Positions 24,015 to 64,000 of a stretch of DNA of 64,000 nt are shown one piece after another. This DNA is from Anaeramoeba ignava BMAN (taxonomy: Eukaryota > Protista > Anaeramoebae): the NCBI GenBank assembly GCA_028826165.1, contig JAPDFW010000001.1, positions 1 to 64,000 of the forward strand, given 5' to 3'. Made by a program: the position numbers and the translations under genes. The notes under the pieces were generated by a model, which was given only the letters and a program-made list of their open reading frames with translations, was not told the origin of the DNA and did not search any database. Numbering within the stretch: position 1 is the first letter of the stretch; each line of letters begins with the position of its first letter.

Positions 24015-27000
24015 ATGTTTCAAAATTTTTCTAATTGGATCAAAAAAAAATTTCGAAAATTTAATTGGTTTTTACTTCTTGAATTAACACTTTTGATTAT
24101 ATTTTTATATGCCTCAATACATAAATTTCGATATTCAGCATCAGAACCTGAAGAGTTACTTGTTTTAAGAAATGATAATGAAGAAGAATTTATTGATCCG
24201 AAAAAACGTTTTAATAAATTTATTTGGATTTTTGTTGATTCACTTGCTTATGATCAAGCGAGTTCAATTTTAGAGTCATTAGAAAGCCATGCAAATCAAT
24301 ATAGAATATTTAATGAAGGTTTTTAAAATGAAAACAAATTTTCCATTTAGACTTATTTATCCAATTTAATTTTATAATTATTTTTATTTTTATTTTTATT
24401 TTTATTTTTATAATTATTTTTATTTTTATTTTTATAATTATTTTTATAATTATTATTTTTATAGGCTTTAAATTTTCTCATGCTCTTTATGACTCTTTTT
24501 TTACGGGAAGACTTCCTTATAATTTTGAAGGTCAAGAGATTGAAGCTGATAATTTATTTTATCAATTTAAAAGATCAGGAAAAGATGTAGTTTATGTTGG
24601 GTTTGTATTGAATATCTGATGATTATTAAATTATAAATAAAATTATAAATAAAATTATAAATAAAATTATAAATAAAATTATAAATAAAAATATAAATAA
24701 AATTATAAATTAAATTATAAATTAAATTATAAATTATAAATTAAATTAAATTATAAATAAAAATATAAATAAAATTATAAATTAAATAATAAATTAAATT
24801 ATAAATAAAAATATAAATTAAATTATAAATAAAATTATAAATTAAATTATAAATTAAAATATAAATTAAATTATAAATAAAATTATAAATAAAAATATAA
24901 ATTAAATTATAAATGAAATTATAAATAAAATTATAAATAAAATTATAAATAAAATTATAAATAAAAATTATAAATAAAATTATAAAATTAAATTATAAAT
25001 TAAAAAATATATAAATAAAAATTATAAAATAAAAATAATAAATTAAATTATAAATTAAATTATAAATTAAATTATAAATAAAAATTATAAATTAAAATAT
25101 AAATTAAAATTATAAATAAATTAAAATTATAAATTAAATTATAAAATAAAATTAAATTATAAATTAAATTATAAATAAAAATTATAAATAAAATTATAAA
25201 TAAAATTATAAATAAAAATTATAAATTAAATTATAAATAAAAATATAAATTAAAATATAAATTAAATTATAAAATAAAATTATAAATAAAAATATAAATT
25301 AAAAATATAAATAAAATTATAAATAAAATTATAAATAAAAATATAAATTAAATAATAAATTAAATTATAAATTAAATTATAAATTAAATTATAAATTAAA
25401 TTATAAATAAAAATATAAATTAAATTATAAATAAAATTATAAGTTAAATTATAAATAAAATTATAAATAAAATTATAAATAAAAATATAAATAAAATTAT
25501 AAATAAAATTATAAATAAAATTATAAATAAAATTATAAATAAAAATATAAATAAAAATAATTATAAAAATATAAATAAAAAATTAAATTATAAATTATAA
25601 ATTAAAATTTGAAATTGAAAATAAAATAGACCTGAAAGACCTACAATATATGTATTAGGAGGATGGGAAAAAGCAAAAGAAAAATACTTCAGTGAAACAA
25701 TCAAGGTATCAGAAGAAGACACACTAATGCAATGGTTATTTGAGCCAGAACGGGGAACACGAGAAGAGCAAGAAATGGGATTAAACGAACAAGAATTTGT
25801 AGATTATCGACTTGACAATCTAAAGAAAAAAAACAGGAGTTTAATAATGTGTTCAGGATTAATGGATCACGTCCATCATCAGCACACAAAACTGGGGGAA
25901 CTAACACTAACACTTGTGCGAAAATTCATTGAGGATTTTGCGCGATTGAAAAATTGGGTGGATCGAAATCCGGATTATTTATTGATTTTCAATTCGGATC
26001 ACGGCGGCCAATCGTACCAAGGCGAGGACCGCGTAAGTCTGCACGGGAGTAACCTAGGCGGAAACGAGCCTTTCGTCAGCTTCTACAATCCCTATCTTGT
26101 CCCCAATCCAAAGCCTGACGAGCAATATAAATTCATCGATACTGTCGATGTTTGTCCCACTATTGTCCAATATATCACCTCAACAAATATCCCAACACTT
26201 AGCTTTGGCATTGCCGCTCCCCTGGCAAACGATACTGAAACAGAACTCGGCATCCGCAAAAGTAACGCCGAGCAGATTAAACACCTCGCCACTTTGAAAG
26301 GAATTAGATTCAACCAGGCCAAATATGAAAACGCTCTTACTGCCAAGAACAACACGCAAATTGAGGAGTTTATGCAGGAGATCAAAGGCCCAATGACCAC
26401 CCTCAAACAGCGTCCCGTGGTTGTTACTGTTTCCTTGTTTCTCACATTGATCTGGGGAGAATACAAAATTCTTCGTCAAATCAAGATTTCTAACCTCGCC
26501 TCCTTCATTGCTCACTTCTTCATCTACTTCCATCTCCTCTATCTCAGCTACGGGTTCATAGAGATTCAAGAGCGTCTCTTCTACAGCTATCTTATCCTCG
26601 TCTTGATTATCATCCTTTTCACCATCGTCAAGAAACGCGGCATTTGGAGAGAATACTCGATGGATTCTTCTCCTGACACATTGTCTTTTCATCAAGATAA
26701 GCCGCATAGAATCAACTCGGGCGGCACATCTTCTTCCCGTTTCAATCGTGTGCTGCTTTCTCTGAAGCAGAACATCCGCGATTTCTCCCTCGATTCACTC
26801 TCTCAGAATTATCTTTTTTGGAAACAGAATCTTCCGTCTCGTCTCAACAATATGATCCATAATTTTATCAAGAAGTTCTTCCATCCTGAAACCCTTGTTC
26901 TTGCGCTCCTCACGCTTAATTCCATTGGCTACATGTTCCTCGACTCTATTGTTCTTATTGAGGAAGCGTTGACTTTGTATCTGTTCTCCATTGTTCCTTT

Positions 27001-29484
27001 TCTTGGTTTTCTCTTTAATTTCTTTCTTACTTTGTTCTATTTCCTTCTTCTTCTCTTGTTTCTTTGGTATGTCTTCGAGTACTATCCATCTCTCCAGGAA
27101 TTCTTGTCTTCTTCTAACTCTCGTTTGGATATTCACCAACTTGATGATAATTCTTCTCAGGATGATCTTCCTATTTTTGAAGATTCAAAGTTTTTCAATG
27201 TTGATTCTTTATCTAGCAGGAATTCTATTCAAAACAATGACAATCAAGAAAATGTAAATTAAATTTAAATTAAATCAAATTAAATCAAATTAAATTAAAT
27301 TAAATCAAATTAAATCAAATCAAATTAAATTAAATCTAAATCAAATCAAATCAAATTAAATTAAAATAAATTAAATTAAAATAAATTAAATCAAATCAAA
27401 TCAAATTAAATCTAAATTAAATTAAATTAAATTAAATTAAATCAAATTAAATTAAATTGAAATCAAAATAAATCAAATTGAATTAAATCAAATTAAATCA
27501 AATTAAATCTAAATTAAATCAAATCAAATCAAATTAAATCAAATCAAATTGAATTAAATTAAATCAAATTAAATCTAAATCTAAATCAAATTAAATTAAA
27601 TCTAAATCTAAATTAAATCAAATTTAATTAAATTCAAATTAAATTAAATCTAAATCTAAATTAAATCAAATTAAATTCAAACCAAATTAAATCTAATTAA
27701 ATTAAATTAAATTAAATCAAAATTAATTCAAATTAAATCTAATCAAATCAAATTAAAATTAAATTAAATTAAATTAAATCAAATTAAATTAAATTAAATT
27801 AAATTCAAATTAAATCAAATTAAATTAAATTAAATTAAATCAAATTAAATCAAATTAAATTAAATCAAATTAAATTAAATTAAATTAAATCAAATTAAAT
27901 CAAATTAAATTAAATCAAATCTAAATTAAATTAAATTAAATTAAATCAAATTAAATTAAATCAAATTAAATTAAATCAAATTAAATTCAAATTAAATCAA
28001 ATTAAATTAAAATTAAATCAAAATTAAATTAAATTAAATTAAATTAAATTAAATCTAAATCAAATTAATTCAAATTAAATTAAATTAAATCAAATTAAAT
28101 CAAATTAAATTAAATTAAATTAAATTAAATCAAAATTAAATTAAATTAAATTCAAATTAAATTAAATTAAATCAAATTAAATTAAATCAAAATTAAATTA
28201 AATCAAATCAAATTAAATCAAATTAAAATATAAAATAAATATTCAAAAAAAAAATAGTCAAACGAACTCACACAGAATAATAAACCTCACAACAAAAACG
28301 AGCCTTTTTCCAACACAGAAAATATACTATCACCACCAAAATCAAGATCTCGCCAAGGCTCAAAATTCTGGATCATGTATGCAATAACAGTATTCAACAT
28401 ATGGGTGTTCCACTTTTGGAATGGACCAGACATCTTTCTTCAAATCACATACTTTATCCTAATCACACACTCAATAATCTTAGTCTTCACAAACAGAAGA
28501 CTCCTCATTGCCCCATTCACATCACTCTCCTTCGCATTATGCCTCGACAACTTATCGCGTTTCTGCTTCATTTTCTTATTCACAATCGAAATGCTTATTC
28601 TTTCTGATTGGATTCTGCCAATTTTATCAAGAGATGTAATCGAAGATAACGAAAAAGAAAAAGATAAAAATAAAGATAAAGAAAAAGAAAAAGAACTGGA
28701 AATTGAAATTGAAAAAGAAAACAGAGAAGAATTTGAGGAAATCGATGGAGTTCAAGACAAAGAAAATACAAACAACAATCAAAACAAAAATAAAGATAAA
28801 ATCAAAAACAAAGATAAAATCAAAAATAAAAACACACAAGATCTTGAAGAAATACAAGAAAATCAAGGATATAATTTCACTCAAAATCACGATCCAAAAT
28901 TCCACAATTTGGATCGTGAGAATTTTGGACGGAATTCAGAACCTTTTCAAATATTCAACCAAGAGCATCAATCAGCAGCGAACACACAGATTCTAAAAGA
29001 GCGGCATTTATTAGTTGCACTTGCGATTATTTTCCAAGCGTTTGCGGATTGGGTTGAGATTCGGAAGGAGAACTTCTCGTTTTCTATTGACACTGCACCA
29101 GGAGAGACAGGGGTTAACCATGTCAAAGTTCCGATGGTGTCCCTATTTCTCATGGTGTTTCACAAATGGTCTATGCCAGGGTTCCTTTTGTTCGGTTATC
29201 TTGCGCGTCTTAATCTTACTCCATCGCATAAGCTTACTACTTGGAGAGTTCTTCTTCAAATTGCTCTTCTTTCTCTCTTCTTGTTCCAGGTTAAGTTCTT
29301 TATTTACCATACTTATGAGGATATTCTTGTTGCTAGCATCACTTATTCTACTATCGCTGTTCTTGTTGGTTCTGATTGGCTTTTTTCTTCTTTTAATGTT
29401 TTGGCTTCTTTTAAAAAGTTCCTCATTCAGAAATGGCAAGAAAGAGATTTTTTTACTAAAAATGAAAAAAGATATTTTCTTTAA
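24015..29484 (+). CDS. GPI ethanolamine phosphate transferase (PIG-O/PIG-G family), 4 exons
   Basis: Exons 24015-24318, 24465-24600, 25630-27253 and 28258-29484 join in frame. Alkaline-phosphatase-superfamily motifs FVDSLAYD, MDHVHH, NSDHGG and DVCPT. Polytopic C terminus. Confidence 0.8.
24625..25610. repeat. Intronic 12-mer satellite (TTATAAATWAAA)n
   Basis: Fills intron 2 of the PIG gene. Confidence 0.9.
27256..28230. repeat. Intronic pentamer satellite (AAATT/AAATC)n
   Basis: Fills intron 3 of the PIG gene. Confidence 0.9.
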
Positions 29485-35708: not shown

Positions 35709-38700
35709 ATGTTTTCGAATGAAAAATCAAATTTTATTCCAAAATTAATCTTTAAATTAATTTCTCGAATTTTTCCAAAATCTTCCAAAAAAGAAAAAAC
35801 CAAAATTCAAAAGTTATTTTCTTATTCAATTAATCATATCCAACAAAATCCATTTTCTTTAAATAAAGAAATTGAAGGAAACAAAATATTAGAAATTATA
35901 AGACAAAAATGTAGATAAAAAACAATTTAAATGTTATATATACAAAATATCCAATATGAAATTTAATTATTTTATATAAAAAATATTCAATATGAAATTT
36001 AAATGTTTTATATATAAAATATTCAATATGAAATTTAAATGTTTTATATATAAAATATTCAATATGAAATTTAATTGTTATATAAAATATTTAATATAAA
36101 ATTTAATTATTTTATATATAAAATATTCAATATGAAATTTAATTGTTATATAAAATATCCAATATAAAATTTAATTATTTTATATATAAAATATCCAATA
36201 TGAAATTTAAATGTTATATACAAAATATTTAATATAAAATTTAATTATATTATATAAAAAATATCCAATATGAAATTTAAATATTTTATATATAAAATAT
36301 TCAATTTGAAATTTAAATGTTTTATATATGAAATTTAATTATTTTATATAAAAAATATTCAATATGAAATTTAATTGTTTTATATATAAAATATTCAATA
36401 TGAAATTTAATTGTTATATAAAATATTCAATTTGAAATTTAATTATTTATTATAATAATTTTCTTTTGGAATAAATTAATCAGTATTCGAAAATCAAGAA
36501 GCATCAAAAGTTGTTAAAGTTACTGAAAAATATCACAATCTAAAATCATCACAAGCTTTTTCAGCAAAAACAATTAATGGAATTTTGCTAGTTTTAAATG
36601 AATTACAAAGAAGTCAACGGAATTCTCATCAAAAAAATATCGATCCAAAACCAAATTTGATCAGGAAAAAAAGATATCCATTTGAGGAATTTCTGACAGA
36701 AAATCAAATGAAAATCCCATTATATAAAAACAAAGGGAATGGAGCCAACACAAAATTTGATATTTTGGAGACTTATTTAGTGGATGATGTTATTTGTGCT
36801 TTGGAAGGCAAAAAAACTCAATTTGTGGAATTTGATTCGAAGAAAAACATGTTCCAAATCAAAGAAAGCGTTGGTGTTCCAAAACCAGCGCGGCATTTAA
36901 TTGCCAAAATATGTGAGTTAGCATGGATTTATAAACAAGCACAAGAATTCATTGAAGAAAAAGCAAAAAATCCTGAATTGACAAACAAAACCGAAAAGGC
37001 GTTTTGTGAGAGTTTAAAGTATGAATTTAGCATTTATTTGCAGAAAATACAACGAATCCGGCAGCAATATAAACGACTTCAAAACCAAAATAAGAAAAAA
37101 TATGGAAAAGGAGCCTTCAAATGAGTTAATGCTGCTATTTGGGGATTGCGGACTCACATTACATTCTGTTTATTCTCAAGTGCGTTTATTAGTTATCAAA
37201 TACAAGGTCATTTACGGACTCGTTGATTCGGTTTCCCAAAAGGAAGCTGGTCAATTATTATCAACAGCGTTTGATTTTTTCCAGCATGGAGACAGAAAAG
37301 TCAAGAAAATTATATCCAGAATCCTCACAAAAACATGGCAACCGATTTTGGATATGATTTATAACTGGATCACTCGTGGCAAGATTGACGACCCTTTCGC
37401 AGAGTTTTTTATTCATATCAACAAAAGAATCCCAAATATTTATTTTTGGAAAGAAAAATACTTGCTAATCGCAGAAAAAATACCCAAATTCATCAACGCA
37501 GAATTTGCAAACAAGATTTTTTTAATCGGAAAAAACATTAATTTCATGCGTATTTGCAACAAGATTCACAAGGAAAATGAATTTGAATTCCCAATTTTCC
37601 AGACAACTATGCAACTAGCAAATGTATCCAAAAAAAAGCAATCAGATAATCTAAAGGATTCAAATGAAAATGTGGAAGATGAGCAGAAAGAAATTATTTT
37701 GGATAATTCTGGAAATGGAGACGAAAAAAATTTCATTGAAAAATTTTATGAGAAAATGAAGAAGCTTGAAAACGAAGTGAGAAAATCGATTCTCAAAACA
37801 AACAAGCAAGTTCTAGAAACAATCCACACAAAATTTCATTTTATGGAGCATTGCACATCAATAAAGAATTTCCTCTTATGCGGAAGAGGAGATTTTATAT
37901 ATTATCTCATAGATTGTCTTGGCGACGAACTTTCGAAGCCCGTAAATACAATTTTGGAGATCAATCTTGGCGGGCTTTTGAATTCTGCAATTCGAAAAAC
38001 GAATGCAGGTAGTTTGTATGTGGATATTATTCGCAGACTAGAAATTGAATTACTCAAGACAAACGAAAGTCAAGAATCACAAAAAAAAATACTTGGATGG
38101 GATGCTTTTTGCTTGAAATACAAAGTAGATTTTCCAATAACAACAGTTATAAACGAGCCCTCAATTGCTCTTTATTCGAAAATTTTCTTGTTTTTATGGA
38201 GATTGAAAAGAGCCGAATTTGCATTGTCTCAGGCATGGCAATGGGACATGATTTCATCGGCTTTGTTTGCGCGATTCCCAGGAATAGCAGAATCGCTGCA
38301 TAAGTTTTTTCTTTTAAGAAGTGAAATGACACATTGTGTTTATAATCTACAGCATTATGTTATGTTTGAGGTTTTGGAATGCTCTTGGAATCAATTCTGC
38401 GAAAATGTTCACAAAGCAGAGGATTTAGATTCGCTTATTGATATTCATGAGAAATATTTGGATAGCATCTTCGATCAGTTGATGCTAACAAAAACTTGTC
38501 AGTCGCTTATTCAACAAATATACAAGTTGTTATCGTTTGTGATGGAATTTAAAAAATTTCAGGATAAATTGCACGAAGCTGGTTTTCAAGAGAATCGGGG
38601 TTTTGATTCAAATAAAACAATTTATGATGGTTTTCTTTTGTTTTCTCAAAAAAAGAAAAATGTGGACAAGAAGAATTCTACTCCTCGTTCAGATAAAATT

Positions 38701-38976
38701 ATCCAAAAATTACCTCAAAAAATTTATTCATTTTCAGAAAATTTCCAGATGATAATTGAAGGTTTTATTGATTTGATTGTTCAATATGAACCATCAAGAC
38801 CGATTCTTTCTGAATTACGTTATCGACTTGATTTTAATCAATTTTATGAGAAAAGAATTCAAAAGGAGATGAAAGCTGTAAGGATTGCACATACAATTCG
38901 ATCATCAGCTAAAAAGACACAAGAAAACAGTGATCATTCTTTTCGTCGAAAGAAAATAAAATTTGGGAAGATTTGA
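35709..38976 (+). CDS. TUBGCP3: Gamma-tubulin complex component 3 (GCP3/Spc98), 2 exons, one apparent frameshift at ~37095
   Basis: Motifs FLLCGRGDFI, GWDAFCLKYKVDFPI, YSKIFLFLWRLKRAE, YVMFEVLECSW, AEDLDSLIDIHEKYL and RLDFNQFY. Intron ~35910-36483. Confidence 0.85.
35925..36450. repeat. Intronic ~30-bp minisatellite (AAATATTCAATATGAAATTTAA...)
   Basis: Directly visible in the GCP3 intron. Confidence 0.85.
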
Positions 38977-53838: not shown

Positions 53839-56826
53839 ATGTCAAGAACAGGAAGAACTGCAGGACCAAGAAGCCAAGAATGGGTACGATTACAACGAAA
53901 AATTTTTTCGCGATGGGTTAAACAAAAATTATTAAGAACCAGACCAGAAATCCAAGTGAACGATGTAGTAGATGATTACAAAGATGGAGTAATGCTATTG
54001 AATCTAATCGAAGTATTAAGCGAATCAAAATTTGAAGGGAAATACAATCAACGACCCAAAATGTCAGTTCATCGAATAGACAATTTAAACAACGCATTAA
54101 AATTCGCATGGAGTAAGGGAGTTGATATGAAGGTGAAACCGTCGGCAGAGCAGCTAGAAAAGGGGGACCAAAAGGCAGCACTAGCTTTGACTTGGGGAAT
54201 CATGATGAAATTCATTAAGATTGACGATGGATCGGGCGGAGAAGCCTTGAATGCAAAGGATGCACTTATGATGTGGTGCAAAAACAAAACCGCAGGATAT
54301 AAAGGAGTCGAGATTACTGACTTCAAGAAGAGTTTTGCGGACGGATACGCTCTGTGCGCAATCATCCACAAACACCGTCCAAAATTAATTGATCTTTCCA
54401 GTTTGGATCCAAATGATCCAATTAAGAACCTGCAGATTGCCCAGGACGCTGCGGAGAAGTACTTTGGCCTGGAAAAATACATCACGCCTGATGAGATTAG
54501 AAAACTTGATGAGAACTCAATGGTTGTTTATGTCAGTGAATACTACTACGGAATTGCCGAGCAAAGAAAACTTGATTTGGCAGCTAGAAGAATTAAAAAG
54601 CTAATTGTTTTGACAAAAGAAAATGACAGGCTAAAAACTGAATATAATAAAACCGCCAAAAATTTCAAAGACACGCTCAAGCGCGTCGAGGTTGTTCTCG
54701 AGGACAGAACAATCGACAACACCATGGCGGGTGCAAAGCTGCGTCTGGAGAAGTTCTACGAGTACAAGACAAAGGAAAAAAGCTCGCTCATTTCGGATCA
54801 ATTGGATCTTGAGTCAAATTACAACAATTTGGCTATGCGTCTCGCCCATCACAAAAGACCCGAATTCAAACCCGAGAAAGGGTGCTCCCTCAAAGAGGTT
54901 GCCCAGGATATGCTCCATCTCGAGGAGTGCGAGCAAGAGAGGAAAGTGGCTCTTCATGCTGAGCTCAACCGCCAGCTCAAACTCGTCAACCTTGCGACAC
55001 AACACGAGTCACGCTTCAACAAACTCTCAGACTACTTCAACGAAAAGCAGGCTTATCTTAATCTCAGAGAGGAAATCGACTCCGTTTCTGCCGCTCATTT
55101 CCAACTTAGACTCCTCGACCGTTACCAAAAGGAGAATGAAACTATGATCAAAACCGGAGTCGCTAATTTGAAGAGTTTGTCCGCTGAATTGAAACAAGAA
55201 AAATACGAATACCAGGCCCATATCGAAGACCACGACAAAGATATCGATGCTAAATTCAAAAAACTTGATGAGTTGGCTAGGATCAAGAAACCCATTCTTG
55301 ATGACCATTTGAAACGTGAGGAATTTATCGTTAAAGTCAGACAAATGAATGATGAGCATAAAGACAAATACAACAAACTCGTCAAATGGTTCCAAATCAA
55401 AAATGCTTATTTGCTCATCAAAGAGGAAATTGACTCCGTTACTCTTGCATCCAAAAACTTGAATATCTTCGGTTCTTACGTCAAGGAATATGAGAAATAT
55501 AAGGACTATGATCTTGTTGAATTTATCAAATTGGGAAAAGAAATTTTGGCTCAAGAATACAAAACAGAACATTCTCATTATGTTTATGATATTACTGAAT
55601 ACCAAGGCAAATCATTCAATCAAAACAGATTTGCTGATATCACTAACAGACACGACGACATGGATGCTAAATTCAAGCAATTATCAGAATTGGCAAACGA
55701 AAAGAAAGGATATCTTGATGAACAGCTGAGACTTGAAACCAAGAAGGAAGAATTGCGATTGGAATTTGCAAATTTGATTTCGGAATTCACGGCTTATGTC
55801 AAATTGGAAATTGAAAATGCAAGTCTTCGTGAGTTTGGATTTACACTTGAAGAAGTTGAGGCGTACAAGAAAGTGATTGACGAGACTGATAAACAAGTTT
55901 TAGGAAATGCAAGCAAGATGAAGGAGTCATGCGAGAAGGTGAAAGTTGAGATGGACGAGTACAAAGTGACGAATAATCCGTACACTGGGCTCACAATAAA
56001 AGACTCCGCAACCTCCTTCCAGACACTCCAAGACGCACTTTCGGAGCGAACAAAAGCCTACGAAGCTGAGCTTAAGCGCCAGCGAGAAAACGACGAGTTG
56101 TGCAAGAAATTTGCGCAGTTGGCAGATCCGTTCTCGAAATGGATCACTGAACAAAAAGATCAAATCACAGCTTCAAAGGAGTCGCTTGAAGTGCAGCTTG
56201 CGTTTGTGGACAAATGCATCTCGAGCTTGTCGACAGAGCAAGCCAAGTTGCAGCCCTTGAAGGATCTCCAGGAAAAGATGGACAAAGCAGGAATCCAAAA
56301 CAACAGACACACTACATTGACATTAAAAGATTTGCTAGTTCAATGGGGACAATATGAGAACTTTTTGAAACGCAAGAAGAAGATGCTTGAGGAGGAGATT
56401 GAGCACCAGAAACTGCGCGGTATTACTGCCGAGCAGATGCAGGAAATTGAAGAGAACTTCAAGCAATTTGATTTTGACAATTCAGGCACTATTGATAGAA
56501 AAGAGCTTACTGCTTGTCTTTATTCTCTTGGGGAAGAGAGAACCCCAAAGGAGATCAATAAAATCATGGAGGAATATGGTGATGGCAAGGATATTTCTTA
56601 TGAGCGCTTCAAGGATTTCATGATTGTTTTGTTTGGTGATACAGATACTAAAGACGAGATTATTAATTCCTTTATTTTGATTAATCGCGGCCACAAAGTT
56701 GCTAAGAAAGATCTTATGGAATTAGTTATGGATGACCAAGATATTGAGTATATTCTCAAAACTGCTCCTCAAGTTGATGAGGGTTATAATTATCATGCTT
56801 GGACTGAAGAAGTTTTTTCACGTTGA
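53839..56826 (+). CDS. Alpha-actinin-like actin cross-linker (2 CH domains, spectrin-like rod, EF-hands), 995 aa, intronless
   Basis: CH1 QRKIFSRWV...DGVMLLNLIEVLS; CH2 AKDALMMWCKNKTAGY...FADGYALCAIIHKHRP; EF-hand FKQFDFDNSGTIDRKELTACLYSLG. Confidence 0.92.
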   Translation: MSRTGRTAGPRSQEWVRLQRKIFSRWVKQKLLRTRPEIQVNDVVDDYKDGVMLLNLIEVLSESKFEGKYNQRPKMSVHRIDNLNNALKFAWSKGVDMKVKPSAEQLEKGDQKAALALTWGIMMKFIKIDDGSGGEALNAKDALMMWCKNKTAGYKGVEITDFKKSFADGYALCAIIHKHRPKLIDLSSLDPNDPIKNLQIAQDAAEKYFGLEKYITPDEIRKLDENSMVVYVSEYYYGIAEQRKLDLAARRIKKLIVLTKENDRLKTEYNKTAKNFKDTLKRVEVVLEDRTIDNTMAGAKLRLEKFYEYKTKEKSSLISDQLDLESNYNNLAMRLAHHKRPEFKPEKGCSLKEVAQDMLHLEECEQERKVALHAELNRQLKLVNLATQHESRFNKLSDYFNEKQAYLNLREEIDSVSAAHFQLRLLDRYQKENETMIKTGVANLKSLSAELKQEKYEYQAHIEDHDKDIDAKFKKLDELARIKKPILDDHLKREEFIVKVRQMNDEHKDKYNKLVKWFQIKNAYLLIKEEIDSVTLASKNLNIFGSYVKEYEKYKDYDLVEFIKLGKEILAQEYKTEHSHYVYDITEYQGKSFNQNRFADITNRHDDMDAKFKQLSELANEKKGYLDEQLRLETKKEELRLEFANLISEFTAYVKLEIENASLREFGFTLEEVEAYKKVIDETDKQVLGNASKMKESCEKVKVEMDEYKVTNNPYTGLTIKDSATSFQTLQDALSERTKAYEAELKRQRENDELCKKFAQLADPFSKWITEQKDQITASKESLEVQLAFVDKCISSLSTEQAKLQPLKDLQEKMDKAGIQNNRHTTLTLKDLLVQWGQYENFLKRKKKMLEEEIEHQKLRGITAEQMQEIEENFKQFDFDNSGTIDRKELTACLYSLGEERTPKEINKIMEEYGDGKDISYERFKDFMIVLFGDTDTKDEIINSFILINRGHKVAKKDLMELVMDDQDIEYILKTAPQVDEGYNYHAWTEEVFSR

Positions 56827-60716: not shown

Positions 60717-60790
60717 GCCACCTTAGCTCAGTTTGGCAGAGCGCTTGTCTTGTAAACAAGAGGTCCCTGGTTCGAGTCCAGAAGGTGGCA
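60717..60790 (+). tRNA. tRNA-Thr(TGT)
   Basis: Acceptor stem GCCACCT/AGGTGGC. A box TAGCTCAGTTTGG. Anticodon arm CTTGT-CTTGTAA-ACAAG. T-loop/B box GGTTCGAGTCC. Downstream T-run. Confidence 0.95.
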
Positions 60791-60868: not shown

Positions 60869-63800
60869 ATGAAATTAAGAATTCATCAAACAAGAACTCT
60901 TTTAAGAAAGAATTGGATTCAATCAAAAAGAAATTTAAAAAGCACTTTGTAAACAATTTTTAAAAAGATTTTAATAATATTTCTTTATATTTTTTTGATC
61001 AAAATTAAATGAAATTAAATGAAATTAAATGAAATAAATTTTTTTGATACGTATCAATTAAATTTTTTTTCTTTATTTGATCATTTAATTACATTTTTAA
61101 TCAGAAACCATTTTTTTAAATACATCAAATTTTATTAATTTTCACTAATTAAATTAATTTGATTTAAACTTATAAATTTTTCATTTTAAATTTTTAAACT
61201 TAATTTAGATGCACAATTTTGGTTCCAGTTATTTTTAATGTTCTTCTTCTGATATTTGGAGCAATTATTAAAGCATCAAGATTAGATGCTAATAAAGGAA
61301 AGTAAGCTAAAAAATTTTAATTTTAATTTTAATTTTAATTTTAATTTCAAAATGAATTTTAATTTCAATTTCAATTTCAAAATGAATTTCAATTTCAATT
61401 TTAATTTCAAATTGAATTTTAATTTCAATTTTAATTTCAAAATGAATTTTAATTTCAATTTTAATTTTAATTTCAATTTTAATTTCAATTTTAATTTCAA
61501 AATGAATTTTAATTTTAATTTTAAATTGAATTTTAATTATAATTTCAAAATGAATTTTAATTTTAATTTCAAAATGAATTTTGATTTCAAATTTAATTTT
61601 AATTAAAAAAGACAGAAATCCAAAACTTGAACCAATTAATTTCCCAAAATGTGATACAGTAAGTTAAATTCAAAATCAAAATTAAAAAATTTTTTTAAAT
61701 TAAAAAAAAATATTTCTTTATTTACAGATAGCATGTTATGACTTTGTTTACAATGAAAAAAACAACACAAAAGTTCAAGAAATTGTTCAAAAAGTATTTT
61801 CGTTTATTTAAAACTAAAAAAAAGACAATATAATTTAAAAAAAAAATCAATTTAAAGATTTGTGATAATGAAGGAATAAATAAAGCAACTAGTACTTTGG
61901 GTTTTGATACAGCGAATGAAGTAGATTATTATCTCTCAAATAATACCAACAAAACTTATGTTGGATATATGTTTTTACTACCAAATGGATCTTATAACGA
62001 TATACCAGATACAACAAATGTAATCATTTTTTTTTAGGAAAAAAATAAAAAGAAGATCCAAAGAAGAATAAAAAAAAATGAAACAAAACAAAAAGAAGAA
62101 GTTATCAAAACTTGAACTAACCAAAAAAAAATAACAAAAAATTTGAACTAATCAAAAATAAAAAGTTCTCAGTAGTAGTGAATCAATCAACCATATATCA
62201 ATCTACAGGACTTGATGATTTTTTGGATGTTTTTGTTCCTGCTCAATATGCTTTACAGAAAGCCTTGTTTGAAGTTCTTCAAAATAAATCAATGAGTTTT
62301 GATGTGACGACAATGAAATATCCTCATCCTCAATTAACACCTACAGATGCTATTCCTATAATGGCTCCTACTTTTTATTTTTGGTCAGCTTTGTTTCAGT
62401 TGGTTATTCAGATGACACAAATTGTTCAAGAAAAAGAATATCGGCAAAGATTTGGGATGATTGTTATGGGGTTGAAGGGTAGTTTTATTAAAATCCATTT
62501 TTAAATTAAATTTAAAATTGAAATTCATTTATAAATTAAAATCCATTTATAAATTAAAATTAAAATTGAAATCAAAATCAAAATCAAAATTGAAATTAAA
62601 ATCAAAATCAAAATCAAATTTAAATTAAAATTAAAATTAAAATTAAAATTAAAATTAAAATTATAATTAAAATCAAAATTAAAATTAAAATCAAAATTAA
62701 AATCAAAATTAAAATTAAAATCAAATTTAAAATTAAAATTAAAATTAAAATTAAAATTAAAATTCAAATCAAAATTGAAATTAAAATCAAAATTAAAATT
62801 AAAATTAAAATTCAAATTGAAATTAAAATTAAAATTAAAATTAAAATTAAAATTAAAATCAAATTTAAAATTAAAATTAAAATTAAAATTAAAATTCATT
62901 TATAAAATTTAATAAAAAAGGTACATCTTATTGGATATCATGGTTCATCGCTAACTTCATCACAATTGTGATCTCAATATTCTTACAAATCGCAACTGGA
63001 GCAATGTTTCAATTTGAATTCTTTTTAGAAAACGCATTTGGAACATATTTCTTTTTATTTTTCCTTTTTGGATTAACAACGATCTCATTAGCATTTTTTT
63101 TCACTTCAATTCTTGGAAAAACAAAAACAACAACAACAGTAGGATTTGTGATGTTTTTCTTTTTCACTATACTAAACGCAATAACAACGAACGTAATCTT
63201 CCAATCGAGCGTACCAAGCTGGGTGCGTACTATACTCTCTTTTCTTCCGCCAGTGGTTTTCTCGAAGGGAGTGTTTGATCTCGCGGATAAAACTTCAGCT
63301 CCGCAATTTCACGGAATCAGATGGGCCGATCGCGGGCACAACGCAAGTATGTACTCGCTTACGACAATATACAACTGGCTCATCTTGGATTTCGTCATCT
63401 TCTTTGTTCTCGCGCTTTATCTGGACAACGTCGTTCCCTCTTCTTCAGGAATAGCAAGACATCCGTTATTTTTCCTGCAGAAATCTTATTGGACTGGAAA
63501 ATATAAGAAAAAAAAACAAACACAAATCTCTTCAGAAACAGACAATTTGCTCGATGCAGATGTTCTCCAGGAAAAGAAGATGATTGCAGACGGCGAGTCT
63601 CCAGAGACAACCGCAGTCTCCATTGTCAATCTGACCAAAGTGTTCAAAAAAACACTTTTCCAAAAAAAAACCGATTTCAAAGCAGTTGATTCTCTGTTCC
63701 TAACGCTGCGCAACGGTGAGCTACTCGGCTTGCTCGGACCCAACGGATCGGGCAAATGCCTTGGTTTGGGAACGCCTGTCATAAAGTACAACGGCGATGT

Positions 63801-64000
63801 TGTTCCCGTGGAAACAATCTCGATCGGCGATGTTCTTCTTGGCGACGATTCTTCTCCTCGTCGTGTCCTTGCAACAACACGAGGCACAGGCCCTCTCTTT
63901 AATATCACTCCCCTCAAAAACCCCAACTTTGTTCTTCCGTATACCGTCAACGATAAGCATATTCTTTCTCTCAAACTCGTCCAAAATATCTCCTACACTT
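60869..64000 (+). CDS. ABCA-subfamily ABC transporter (5' part, multi-exon), intein-containing, runs off the window
   Basis: N-terminal QTRTLLRKNWIQSKRN, IVQEKEYRQRFGMIVMGLK|GTSYWISWF, LALYLDNVVP, and NBD start AVDSLFLTLRNGELLGLLGPNGSGK. The last exon, 62921-64000, is open and in frame. Confidence 0.9.
63757..64000 (+). mobile_element. Intein (N-terminal splicing region) inserted in the Walker A motif of ABCA NBD1; truncated by the window end
   Basis: In-frame CLGLGTPVIKYNGDVVPVETISIGDVLLGDDSSPRRVLATTRGTGPLFNI...YTVNDKHILSL follows GPNGSGK directly. This gives block A with Cys1, the N2 motif and the block B xxH motif. Confidence 0.92.

What the first reader, a model, noticed from the sequence alone, without database searches (positions are those of the whole stretch)
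63757..64000. Intein inserted in the P-loop of a eukaryotic ABCA transporter
Seen: the ABCA frame reads ...GELLGLLGPNGSGK and then, where the invariant T/S of Walker A belongs, continues CLGLGTPVIKYNGDVVPVETISIGDVLLGDDSSPRRVLATTRGTGPLFNITPLKNPNFVLPYTVNDKHILSLK to the window end without a stop. Established: C-L-x-x-G-T-x-V...G-D-x-V/L is intein block A/N2, and TVNxxHIL is block B with the catalytic His. Inteins favour P-loop GK|T/S sites (e.g. yeast VMA1), and the GDDS.PR.V...RG pattern resembles VMA1-type and giant-virus inteins. Nuclear inteins are rare and mostly lie in replication, transcription or splicing genes, although Anaeramoeba is a known intein-rich exception. Inference: a self-splicing, possibly homing-endonuclease-bearing element sits in a lipid-transporter ATPase, so ATP binding would depend on splicing. 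The ORF track misses it because the frame is open-ended.
Basis: partly seen in the sequence, partly recalled or inferred. Interest (0 to 1): 0.92.

Follow-up and report, generated by a model that had tools for sequence, protein, structure and literature searches.

The report
Intein in an amoeba's ABCA transporter
A real self-splicing protein insert (intein) sits in the ATP-binding loop of a membrane transporter of the amoeba Anaeramoeba ignava; it is one of about 100 inteins already surveyed in this genome, but the same transporter site turns out to be invaded in two other single-celled eukaryotes as well.

Summary
Confirmed and completed. The genome is Anaeramoeba ignava BMAN (size and scaffold count match exactly). 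The frame runs past the window: a 369-aa class 1 intein (C3:63757-64863, Cys1 to His-Asn, then Ser) splits Walker A (GPNGSGK|STT) of a half-size ABCA transporter. It folds like yeast PI-SceI. Its homing endonuclease has lost both catalytic acids and is probably dead. A spliced-transcript contig keeps the insert, so it is no intron; splicing itself is untested. It belongs to a family of about 40 related inteins here, mostly at Walker A GK|S/T. Gallot-Lavallee 2023 surveyed this proteome (103 inteins); ABC hosts are not named in the text, and Dataset S1 was unavailable, but it is probably listed (about 85%). A second ABCA paralog has an intein at this site; a third is empty, with an intron 15 nt upstream. 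Not found in the papers searched: the same site carries inteins in a metagenomic eukaryote (P0207), in five prokaryote-type ABC ATPases, and in assembly PPCM01, where a 99%-identical endonuclease-free mini-intein starts in six diverged ABCA genes. The scan noted this stretch (s1-686540) and sister inteins before.

The parts
60869..64000 (+). Half-size ABCA transporter gene, 9 exons, 1248-aa precursor in the public gene model P0070; runs past the window end to contig G000:C3 position 66642 (contig numbering continues the window's)
   Evidence: Exon map; Pfam ABC2_membrane_3, ABC_tran, R1_ABCA1, Hom_end_hint
62923..64000 (+). Single long exon (continues to C3:65310) holding the last membrane helices, Walker A, the whole intein and most of the NBD
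   Evidence: transcript contig X3 record 23 covers it in one piece, with loose ends that match the neighbouring exons
63736..63756 (+). N-extein half of Walker A, GPNGSGK; the Lys is residue -1
63757..64000 (+). Intein, 369 aa, class 1, VMA1/PRP8 (Hom_end_hint) type; true extent C3:63757-64863. Beyond the window: decayed LAGLIDADG remnant about C3:64252-64755 (block C 64291-64320 reads LGVVLGNF for LGxWLGDG; block E 64477-64506 reads LSAVVTSAG for LAGLLDSDG), blocks F and G 64795-64863 ending His368-Asn369, then Ser+1 and the rest of the NBD 64864-65310
   Evidence: Pfam PF05203 E=6.1e-13 over 1-368, Hom_end 17.7 bits under its 21.1 cut-off, ABC_tran 25-136 after it; alignment; model matches PI-SceI 1vde, Foldseek E=2.1e-20, TM 0.67
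63757..63771 (+). Block A with nucleophile Cys1
63943..63960 (+). Block B, N-x-x-H with His68; N65 and H68 invariant in the 8-sequence alignment

Best explanation
A domesticated, no longer self-mobile class 1 intein. The gene is transcribed with the intein DNA retained in the mRNA (shown). The 1248-aa precursor is made with the intein on the cytosolic ATP-binding domain. Cys1 attacks the Lys(-1) peptide bond, helped by block B His68; the acyl group passes to Ser+1; Asn369 cyclises with help from His368; an O-to-N shift gives GPNGSGKSTT (inferred from the standard class 1 mechanism and intact residues, not tested). The two residues joined are the phosphate-binding Lys and Mg-binding Ser of Walker A, so the transporter cannot bind ATP normally until it splices; with one NBD per chain, both sites of a dimer depend on this (inferred). 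The element arrived long ago by homing of a P-loop-preferring intein family widespread in giant viruses, phages and bacteria, then lost endonuclease activity; it persists because only a precise deletion would spare the P-loop. Most likely one invasion preceded the duplication that gave the C3 and C126 paralogs (about 0.6); separate gains or paralog-to-paralog transfer are not excluded.
For: All class 1 catalytic residues present. Fold matches PI-SceI and Prp8 inteins. Removing 369 residues restores a continuous ABC_tran match: profile 3-25 before, 25-136 after. mRNA retains the insert, and no joint skips it in three runs. Between the two ABCA inteins the splicing parts are 58% and 69% identical but the endonuclease part 24%; C-exteins are 77% identical: the pattern expected if splicing is under selection and the endonuclease is not. 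About 40 relatives in this genome, most at Walker A K|S/T; of 324 intein starts in public relatives, 230 follow a Walker A motif and 52 more follow GK. Three other Anaeramoeba inteins were shown to splice (PMC10710043). Whole-intein trees join the two ABCA inteins (97 quick, 96/87 careful).
Against: No protein-level test of splicing. The sister relationship is not stable: a tree without the endonuclease part joins the C3 intein to a thymidine-kinase intein from a short metagenomic contig (P0001, 97/95) instead, and adding one long branch dropped the pair's bootstrap to 30. A. ignava inteins are long, AT-biased branches, so their grouping away from public sequences may be an artefact.
Confidence: 0.86

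Rival explanations
1. The intein is a regulatory switch: splicing is conditional (redox state of Cys1, metal ions) and gates transporter activity in this anaerobe.
For: Position at the two key Walker A residues; retained in two paralogs after endonuclease loss; conditional splicing is documented for mycobacterial DnaB inteins (abstracts of PMC6195587 and PMC7360933).
Against: Retention is fully explained by the need for precise excision; about 40 sister elements sit in unrelated proteins of the same cell; a third ABCA paralog does without one. No second Cys is conserved in the alignment.
Confidence: 0.07
2. The intein no longer splices (or only cleaves), and the gene makes an inactive or truncated transporter.
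For: Strongly decayed central domain; the paralog's intein is frame-broken as assembled.
Against: Every catalytic residue is kept; the NBD motifs after the insert are intact and 77% identical between paralogs; the gene is transcribed and its introns are spliced.
Confidence: 0.05
3. The endonuclease is still active and the element still homes to empty ABCA alleles.
For: The LAGLIDADG-like fold is still predicted, and block H is conserved.
Against: Both catalytic acids replaced, about 35 residues deleted; no near-identical copy in the genome (DNA search finds only an 86% 63-bp flank match; best protein relatives 35-43%); no empty allele seen in contigs (contigs drop rare variants).
Confidence: 0.02
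4. Assembly chimera, or a segment removed as an RNA intron.
For: Frame breaks do occur in this assembly (three other inteins are out of frame).
Against: Two DNA runs carry the stretch in one contig each (records 7 and 14) and a spliced-transcript contig retains it (record 23); a diverged paralog has the same architecture.
Confidence: 0.005

Closest known systems
Anaeramoeba ignava inteins of Gallot-Lavallee et al. 2023 (PMC10710043), probably network cluster 15
   Same: Same genome; length 369 aa against a BMAN mean of 367.6; its relatives here sit in Prp8 (several sites) and two VMA sites, as the paper states for cluster 15 (24 BMAN proteins, 28 sites), and in SRP receptor and eIF5B, host types named in the cluster 15 tree legend; an intron near the site in an intein-free paralog is a pattern the paper describes.
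   Different: The main text never mentions an ABC transporter. Dataset S1 is not held, so neither its listing nor its cluster number could be read. The paper's P-loop-hopping example is cluster 1 (class 3, atypical first residue); this element is class 1 with Cys1.
Yeast VMA1 intein PI-SceI and fungal Prp8 inteins (Pfam Hom_end_hint / Hom_end)
   Same: Same splicing fold, connector and LAGLIDADG architecture (Foldseek E=2e-20); VMA1 site a also lies at a P-loop (own knowledge).
   Different: About 18% identity; host is a membrane ABC transporter; +1 residue is Ser; catalytic acids of the endonuclease lost.
Giant-virus, phage and bacterial P-loop inteins (replication factor C, thymidine kinase, Lon, helicases; P0001, P0073-P0079)
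   Same: Best public matches, 29-35% identity over the full length; same GK|S/T site.
   Different: Many keep intact endonuclease motifs; hosts are unrelated to ABCA.
Prokaryote-type ABC ATPases with an intein at Walker A (P0017, P0021, P0078, P0159, P0226)
   Same: Same intein family at the homologous position of an ABC_tran domain.
   Different: Single-domain nitrate/sulfonate-type ATPases, the two whose contigs were read lying near OmpA genes on phage-like or bacterial DNA; intact endonuclease motifs; not the donors: ranks 123-168 of 185 by similarity, and a clade with the ABCA inteins is rejected, AU p=0.017.

Membership tests
Class 1 cis-splicing intein | In-frame insert with Cys/Ser/Thr at position 1 | tested here: met
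   Cys at 63757, open frame through 64863
Class 1 cis-splicing intein | Block B His | tested here: met
   N65-x-x-H68, invariant in alignment A1
Class 1 cis-splicing intein | Terminal His-Asn followed by Cys/Ser/Thr | tested here: met
   His368-Asn369 then Ser+1
Class 1 cis-splicing intein | HINT fold | tested here: met
   Predicted model, pLDDT 92-96 over the first 50 and about 89-95 over the last 30 residues; top matches PI-SceI and Prp8 inteins
Class 1 cis-splicing intein | Removal restores a continuous host domain | tested here: met
   ABC_tran profile 3-25 before, 25-136 after
Class 1 cis-splicing intein | Self-excision with extein ligation at protein level | not testable with these tools
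   Needs proteomics or a reporter
Class 3 intein (Anaeramoeba cluster 1 type) | Non-nucleophilic first residue, block B Trp, block F Cys | tested here: not met
   Cys1; block B has no Trp; block F has no Cys
Active LAGLIDADG homing endonuclease intein | Acidic catalytic residue in blocks C and E | tested here: not met
   Asn in block C and Ala in block E at the Asp columns
Active LAGLIDADG homing endonuclease intein | Cleavage of the empty allele | not testable with these tools
   Needs an in vitro assay
ABCA transporter (half-size) | ABC2_membrane_3 domain, one NBD, C-terminal R1 domain | tested here: met
   Pfam on P0070: ABC2_membrane_3 E=9e-27, ABC_tran E=8e-23, R1_ABCA1 E=3e-7
ABCA transporter (half-size) | Lipid transport activity | not testable with these tools
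   Substrate assumed from family only
Anaeramoeba network cluster 15 (PMC10710043) | Listed in Dataset S1 or linked above the 30% splicing-domain threshold to its members | tested here: inconclusive
   Splicing parts 46-72% identical to in-genome SMC and Lon inteins, and relatives sit in Prp8 and VMA sites as the paper states; Dataset S1 is not held

The most novel reading that the evidence does not exclude
The ABCA Walker A site is a recurrent, independently invaded intein target across eukaryotes, and Anaeramoeba is not alone: a second protist (assembly GCA_002919055.1, probably a Carpediemonas-like fornicate) is undergoing a very recent burst in which one endonuclease-free 198-aa mini-intein, 99% identical in DNA, has spread to at least six ABCA genes whose flanking proteins are only 27-58% identical, and apparently to the unrelated proteasome ATPase Rpt3. 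That would be direct, datable evidence of non-allelic intein spread without an endonuclease in cis. The A. ignava element would be the old, decayed end state of the same process.
Probability: 0.55. Interest if true: 0.72.

Novelty: already known. Interest (0 to 1): 0.36.

Why it matters
The element itself adds little to what is published: it is one more of A. ignava's inteins, of the standard chemistry, at the favourite P-loop site, in a proteome that was screened with methods that would detect it. It does show that a polytopic membrane transporter tolerates an intein, a host class not mentioned in the text of three intein surveys. The follow-up matters more: the same site is occupied in two further eukaryotes and in prokaryote-type ABC ATPases, and the near-identical copies in PPCM01 offer a testable case for the open question of how inteins move between non-allelic sites, and for whether Anaeramoeba is an outlier, which the 2023 paper leaves open.

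Tried and rejected
GC island: the exon around the intein has about 45% GC against 11-23% GC3 in neighbouring exons, which looked like a homing or conversion scar. Rejected: intein-free long exons in the window (alpha-actinin 53839-56823, ORF 25727-27259) reach GC3 0.45-0.58 mid-exon too. Direct descent from prokaryotic ABC-ATPase inteins: rejected. Hop from the SMC gene with the identical GPNGSGK|S peptide: unsupported; only 17 of 30 flanking bases match and the tree does not join them. One origin for all eukaryotic ABCA inteins: unresolved to unlikely; P0207 groups with the A. ignava pair in one quick tree and 70% of bootstrap trees but not in the best careful tree, and the four are never one group in the splicing-domain tree. 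NCBIfam has no model for this intein. No cultured phage record covers an ABC-plus-intein protein. Paper searches for ABC transporter inteins and for Carpediemonas inteins gave nothing relevant. The PPCM01 organism could not be named from papers. One protein search for more copies of the mini-intein timed out. My working label 'MDN' is wrong: those hosts are cytoplasmic dynein heavy chain AAA4 (context; own knowledge). I built no joined spliced model and no intein-excised product; searches used single-exon references or the stored public protein P0070. Three frame-broken inteins were read with X at the break, in a script only.

Full report
Observation. The 81 residues inside the window match Pfam Hom_end_hint at E=1.1e-10.

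Extension. The window is G000:C3:1-64000 of a 105,354-bp contig in a genome of 42,843,398 bases in 147 contigs. These figures equal those published for Anaeramoeba ignava BMAN (supplement of PMC11550330). Past 64000 the frame ends the insert with His-Asn at 64863 and resumes with STTINML, Q-loop, signature, Walker B, D-loop and H-loop. The intein is 369 aa. ABC_tran matches profile positions 3-25 before it and 25-136 after it. The public gene model (P0070, 1248 aa, in NCBI, UniRef and nr) keeps the insert and describes a half-size ABCA with a membrane domain, one NBD and an R1 domain in nine exons, C3:60869-66642.

Not an intron, not a chimera. In run X3 one 3,790-nt contig covers the whole exon, and its loose ends are the neighbouring exons, so it is a spliced transcript that retains the intein DNA. 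The run's type is not on record; its RNA nature is inferred from these junctions. Two DNA runs of one sample also carry the stretch in one contig each, and no joint skips the insert. Contigs drop rare variants, so a rare empty allele is not excluded. The three holders come from two samples, one of which may be the assembly's source.

Anatomy and mechanism. Cys1, block B N65-x-x-H68, block F, His368-Asn369 and Ser+1 are all present: class 1 chemistry, not the class 3 type. The AlphaFold model (mean pLDDT 76, above 89 in most of the splicing parts) matches PI-SceI at E=2.1e-20, then archaeal VMA and fungal Prp8 inteins. The endonuclease is decayed: both catalytic Asp columns are replaced, about 35 residues are missing, and Hom_end scores under its cut-off. 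Shown: sequence, fold prediction, transcription. Inferred from established intein chemistry and Walker A function: four-step splicing that joins the phosphate-binding Lys to the Mg-binding Ser, without which the transporter cannot bind ATP normally. Not shown: splicing, substrate, any regulation.

Genomic context. The intein has about 40 relatives in the genome (67 partial matches; 41 Hom_end_hint matches). Of those read, most sit at Walker A K|S/T in SMC, Lon, dynein, eIF5B, HBS1-like GTPases, SRP receptor, MCM, TRIP13, RecQ, CTF18-like and XPB proteins; others sit in Na/K-ATPase, Prp8, VMA, a CDC14-like phosphatase and Ariadne-like ligases (host names from motif recognition, own knowledge). 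Nearly all have decayed endonuclease motifs. A second ABCA (C126:867910-869371, minus) has an intein at the same site, 43% identical, with a one-base frame surplus as assembled; two other inteins are also out of frame, one in an SMC gene likely to be essential, so assembly error is the likelier cause (inference, untested). A third ABCA half transporter (C82, near 397,300-398,000) is intein-free and has a 477-nt intron 15 nt upstream of the site, the pattern described in PMC10710043.

Origin. The two ABCA inteins are reciprocal best matches among 185 inteins and sisters in whole-intein trees, but a tree without the endonuclease part pairs C3 with a thymidine-kinase intein, P0001. One old invasion followed by duplication is my best guess (0.6). 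The best public matches are 29-35% identical inteins of giant-virus-type RFC, thymidine kinase and other P-loop proteins. Five prokaryote-type ABC ATPases carry the same intein family at the homologous site, but the four tested are not the donors.

The same site elsewhere. A full HMMER scan found P0207, an ABCA-PhoD fusion on a 65-kb eukaryotic metagenome contig (60% GC in the part read), with a 280-aa intein at GHNGAGK|S, beside an intein-free ABCA. A DNA pattern scan for ABC Walker A followed by Cys found six contigs of assembly GCA_002919055.1. Seven ABCA-like loci there, six clearly distinct (27-58% identical over the last 60 N-extein residues), begin the same 198-aa endonuclease-free intein, about 99% identical in DNA over 467-569 bases where that much is assembled. 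Six break inside the element; the seventh runs through it into the C-terminal half of proteasome ATPase Rpt3, most simply a chimeric join through a multi-copy repeat, which implies that Rpt3 also carries it. The left junctions differ in their upstream bases, which argues that they are real, but I could not check reads. That Rpt3 groups with Ergobibamus (SH-aLRT 90), and GC content and contig sizes fit the Carpediemonas frisia bin (58.6% GC, N50 9.5 kb; PMC8516963); the identity is unproven. These inteins are not close to the A. ignava pair. The other pattern hits were archaeal SMC and phage Rad50-like inteins, or false hits such as probable intron donors.

Comparison with what is known. PMC10710043 screened the predicted A. 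ignava proteome with BLAST and intein HMMs, iteratively, and reports 103 inteins in 79 host proteins, homing into P-loops of unrelated proteins, intron-intein exclusion among paralogs, and splicing for three inteins. This element is in the public proteome and is easily detected, so it is very probably in their Dataset S1 (my estimate 85%), which is not held. The text of that paper and of two earlier surveys (PMC4760082, PMC5784728) does not contain 'ABC'. It works like PI-SceI without the endonuclease, and meets every testable criterion of a class 1 intein.

Verdict. Real, complete, expressed intein; ordinary chemistry; known organism and phenomenon, probably already catalogued. Interest 0.36, raised from about 0.25 by the recurrence of the ABCA site in other eukaryotes and above all by the near-identical mini-intein in PPCM01, which deserves its own follow-up. 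I did not build a joined spliced model or an intein-excised product; searches used single exons or the stored public protein.

Noticed in passing
L069:8274-8867(-), L069:12498-12976, L070:2387-2865, L073:6055-6143, L074:1-73(-), L085:7754-8324, L088:4843-5321 (PPCM01 = GCA_002919055.1; Logan SRR4018424): A 198-aa endonuclease-free mini-intein, about 99% identical in DNA, starts at Walker A of seven ABCA loci (six distinct) in an intron-poor, 55-60% GC eukaryote, probably a Carpediemonas-like fornicate; one contig joins it to an Rpt3 C-terminal half. Looks like a recent non-allelic burst; no paper found.
   Followed up: partly
L067:10001-14830 (JGI 3300056625, Ga0558121_03644): ABCA-PhoD phosphatase fusion (P0207) of an unidentified eukaryote with a 280-aa intein at the same Walker A site, next to a divergent intein-free ABCA.
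   Followed up: partly
L036:7587-9458, L037:8001-9833 (P0017, P0021; also P0078, P0159, P0226): Prokaryote-type ABC ATPases with intact-looking endonuclease inteins at Walker A, near OmpA genes on phage-like or bacterial contigs; in L037 a free endonuclease VII gene lies just upstream.
   Followed up: partly
G000:C126:867910-869371 (-) (L005, L009): Second ABCA paralog with an intein at the same site, out of frame by one base near 868800-868820 as assembled; part of its transcript is in run X3 (record 24).
   Followed up: partly
G000:C82 about 397,300-398,000 (L041:991-1520): Third ABCA half transporter, intein-free, with a 477-nt intron inside the Walker A codons 15 nt before the site. The second NBDs of five ABCC-like genes (L042-L046) also have an intron inside Walker A.
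   Followed up: yes
L060, L063 (C60, C61); L058 (C71); L012, L021 (C55, C102): Members of the same intein family outside P-loops: before a Cys in two Ariadne-like RBR ligases, before the catalytic Cys of a CDC14-like phosphatase, and at the DK|TGT phosphorylation motif of two Na/K-ATPases.
   Followed up: no
window 60717-60790; 57992, 60193, 60482: tRNA-Thr(TGT) gene just upstream of the ABCA gene, preceded by three exact 18-nt copies of its 5' end inside tandem AT-rich repeat units.
   Followed up: partly
window 63320, 63750; contig C3 64204, 65190, 65220: All five differences between the reference and public contigs run from G/C to A/T; three are synonymous. One lies 7 bases before the intein.
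   Followed up: no
P0183, P0185, P0188: Public proteins with inteins back to back or three residues apart (an RNA polymerase subunit with three; two inteins inside one Walker A motif in P0185).
   Followed up: no
L068, L071, L077, L080, L086, L089, L091, L094, L097-L102: Phage Rad50/SbcC-like genes that stop 28-39 residues after Walker A GK|C, as expected for split inteins; L095, L096 and L103 carry contiguous mini-inteins at the same site.
   Followed up: no
window 53839-56823 and 37021-38973: Alpha-actinin-like gene and gamma-tubulin complex component; long exons here have much higher third-position GC than short exons.
   Followed up: partly
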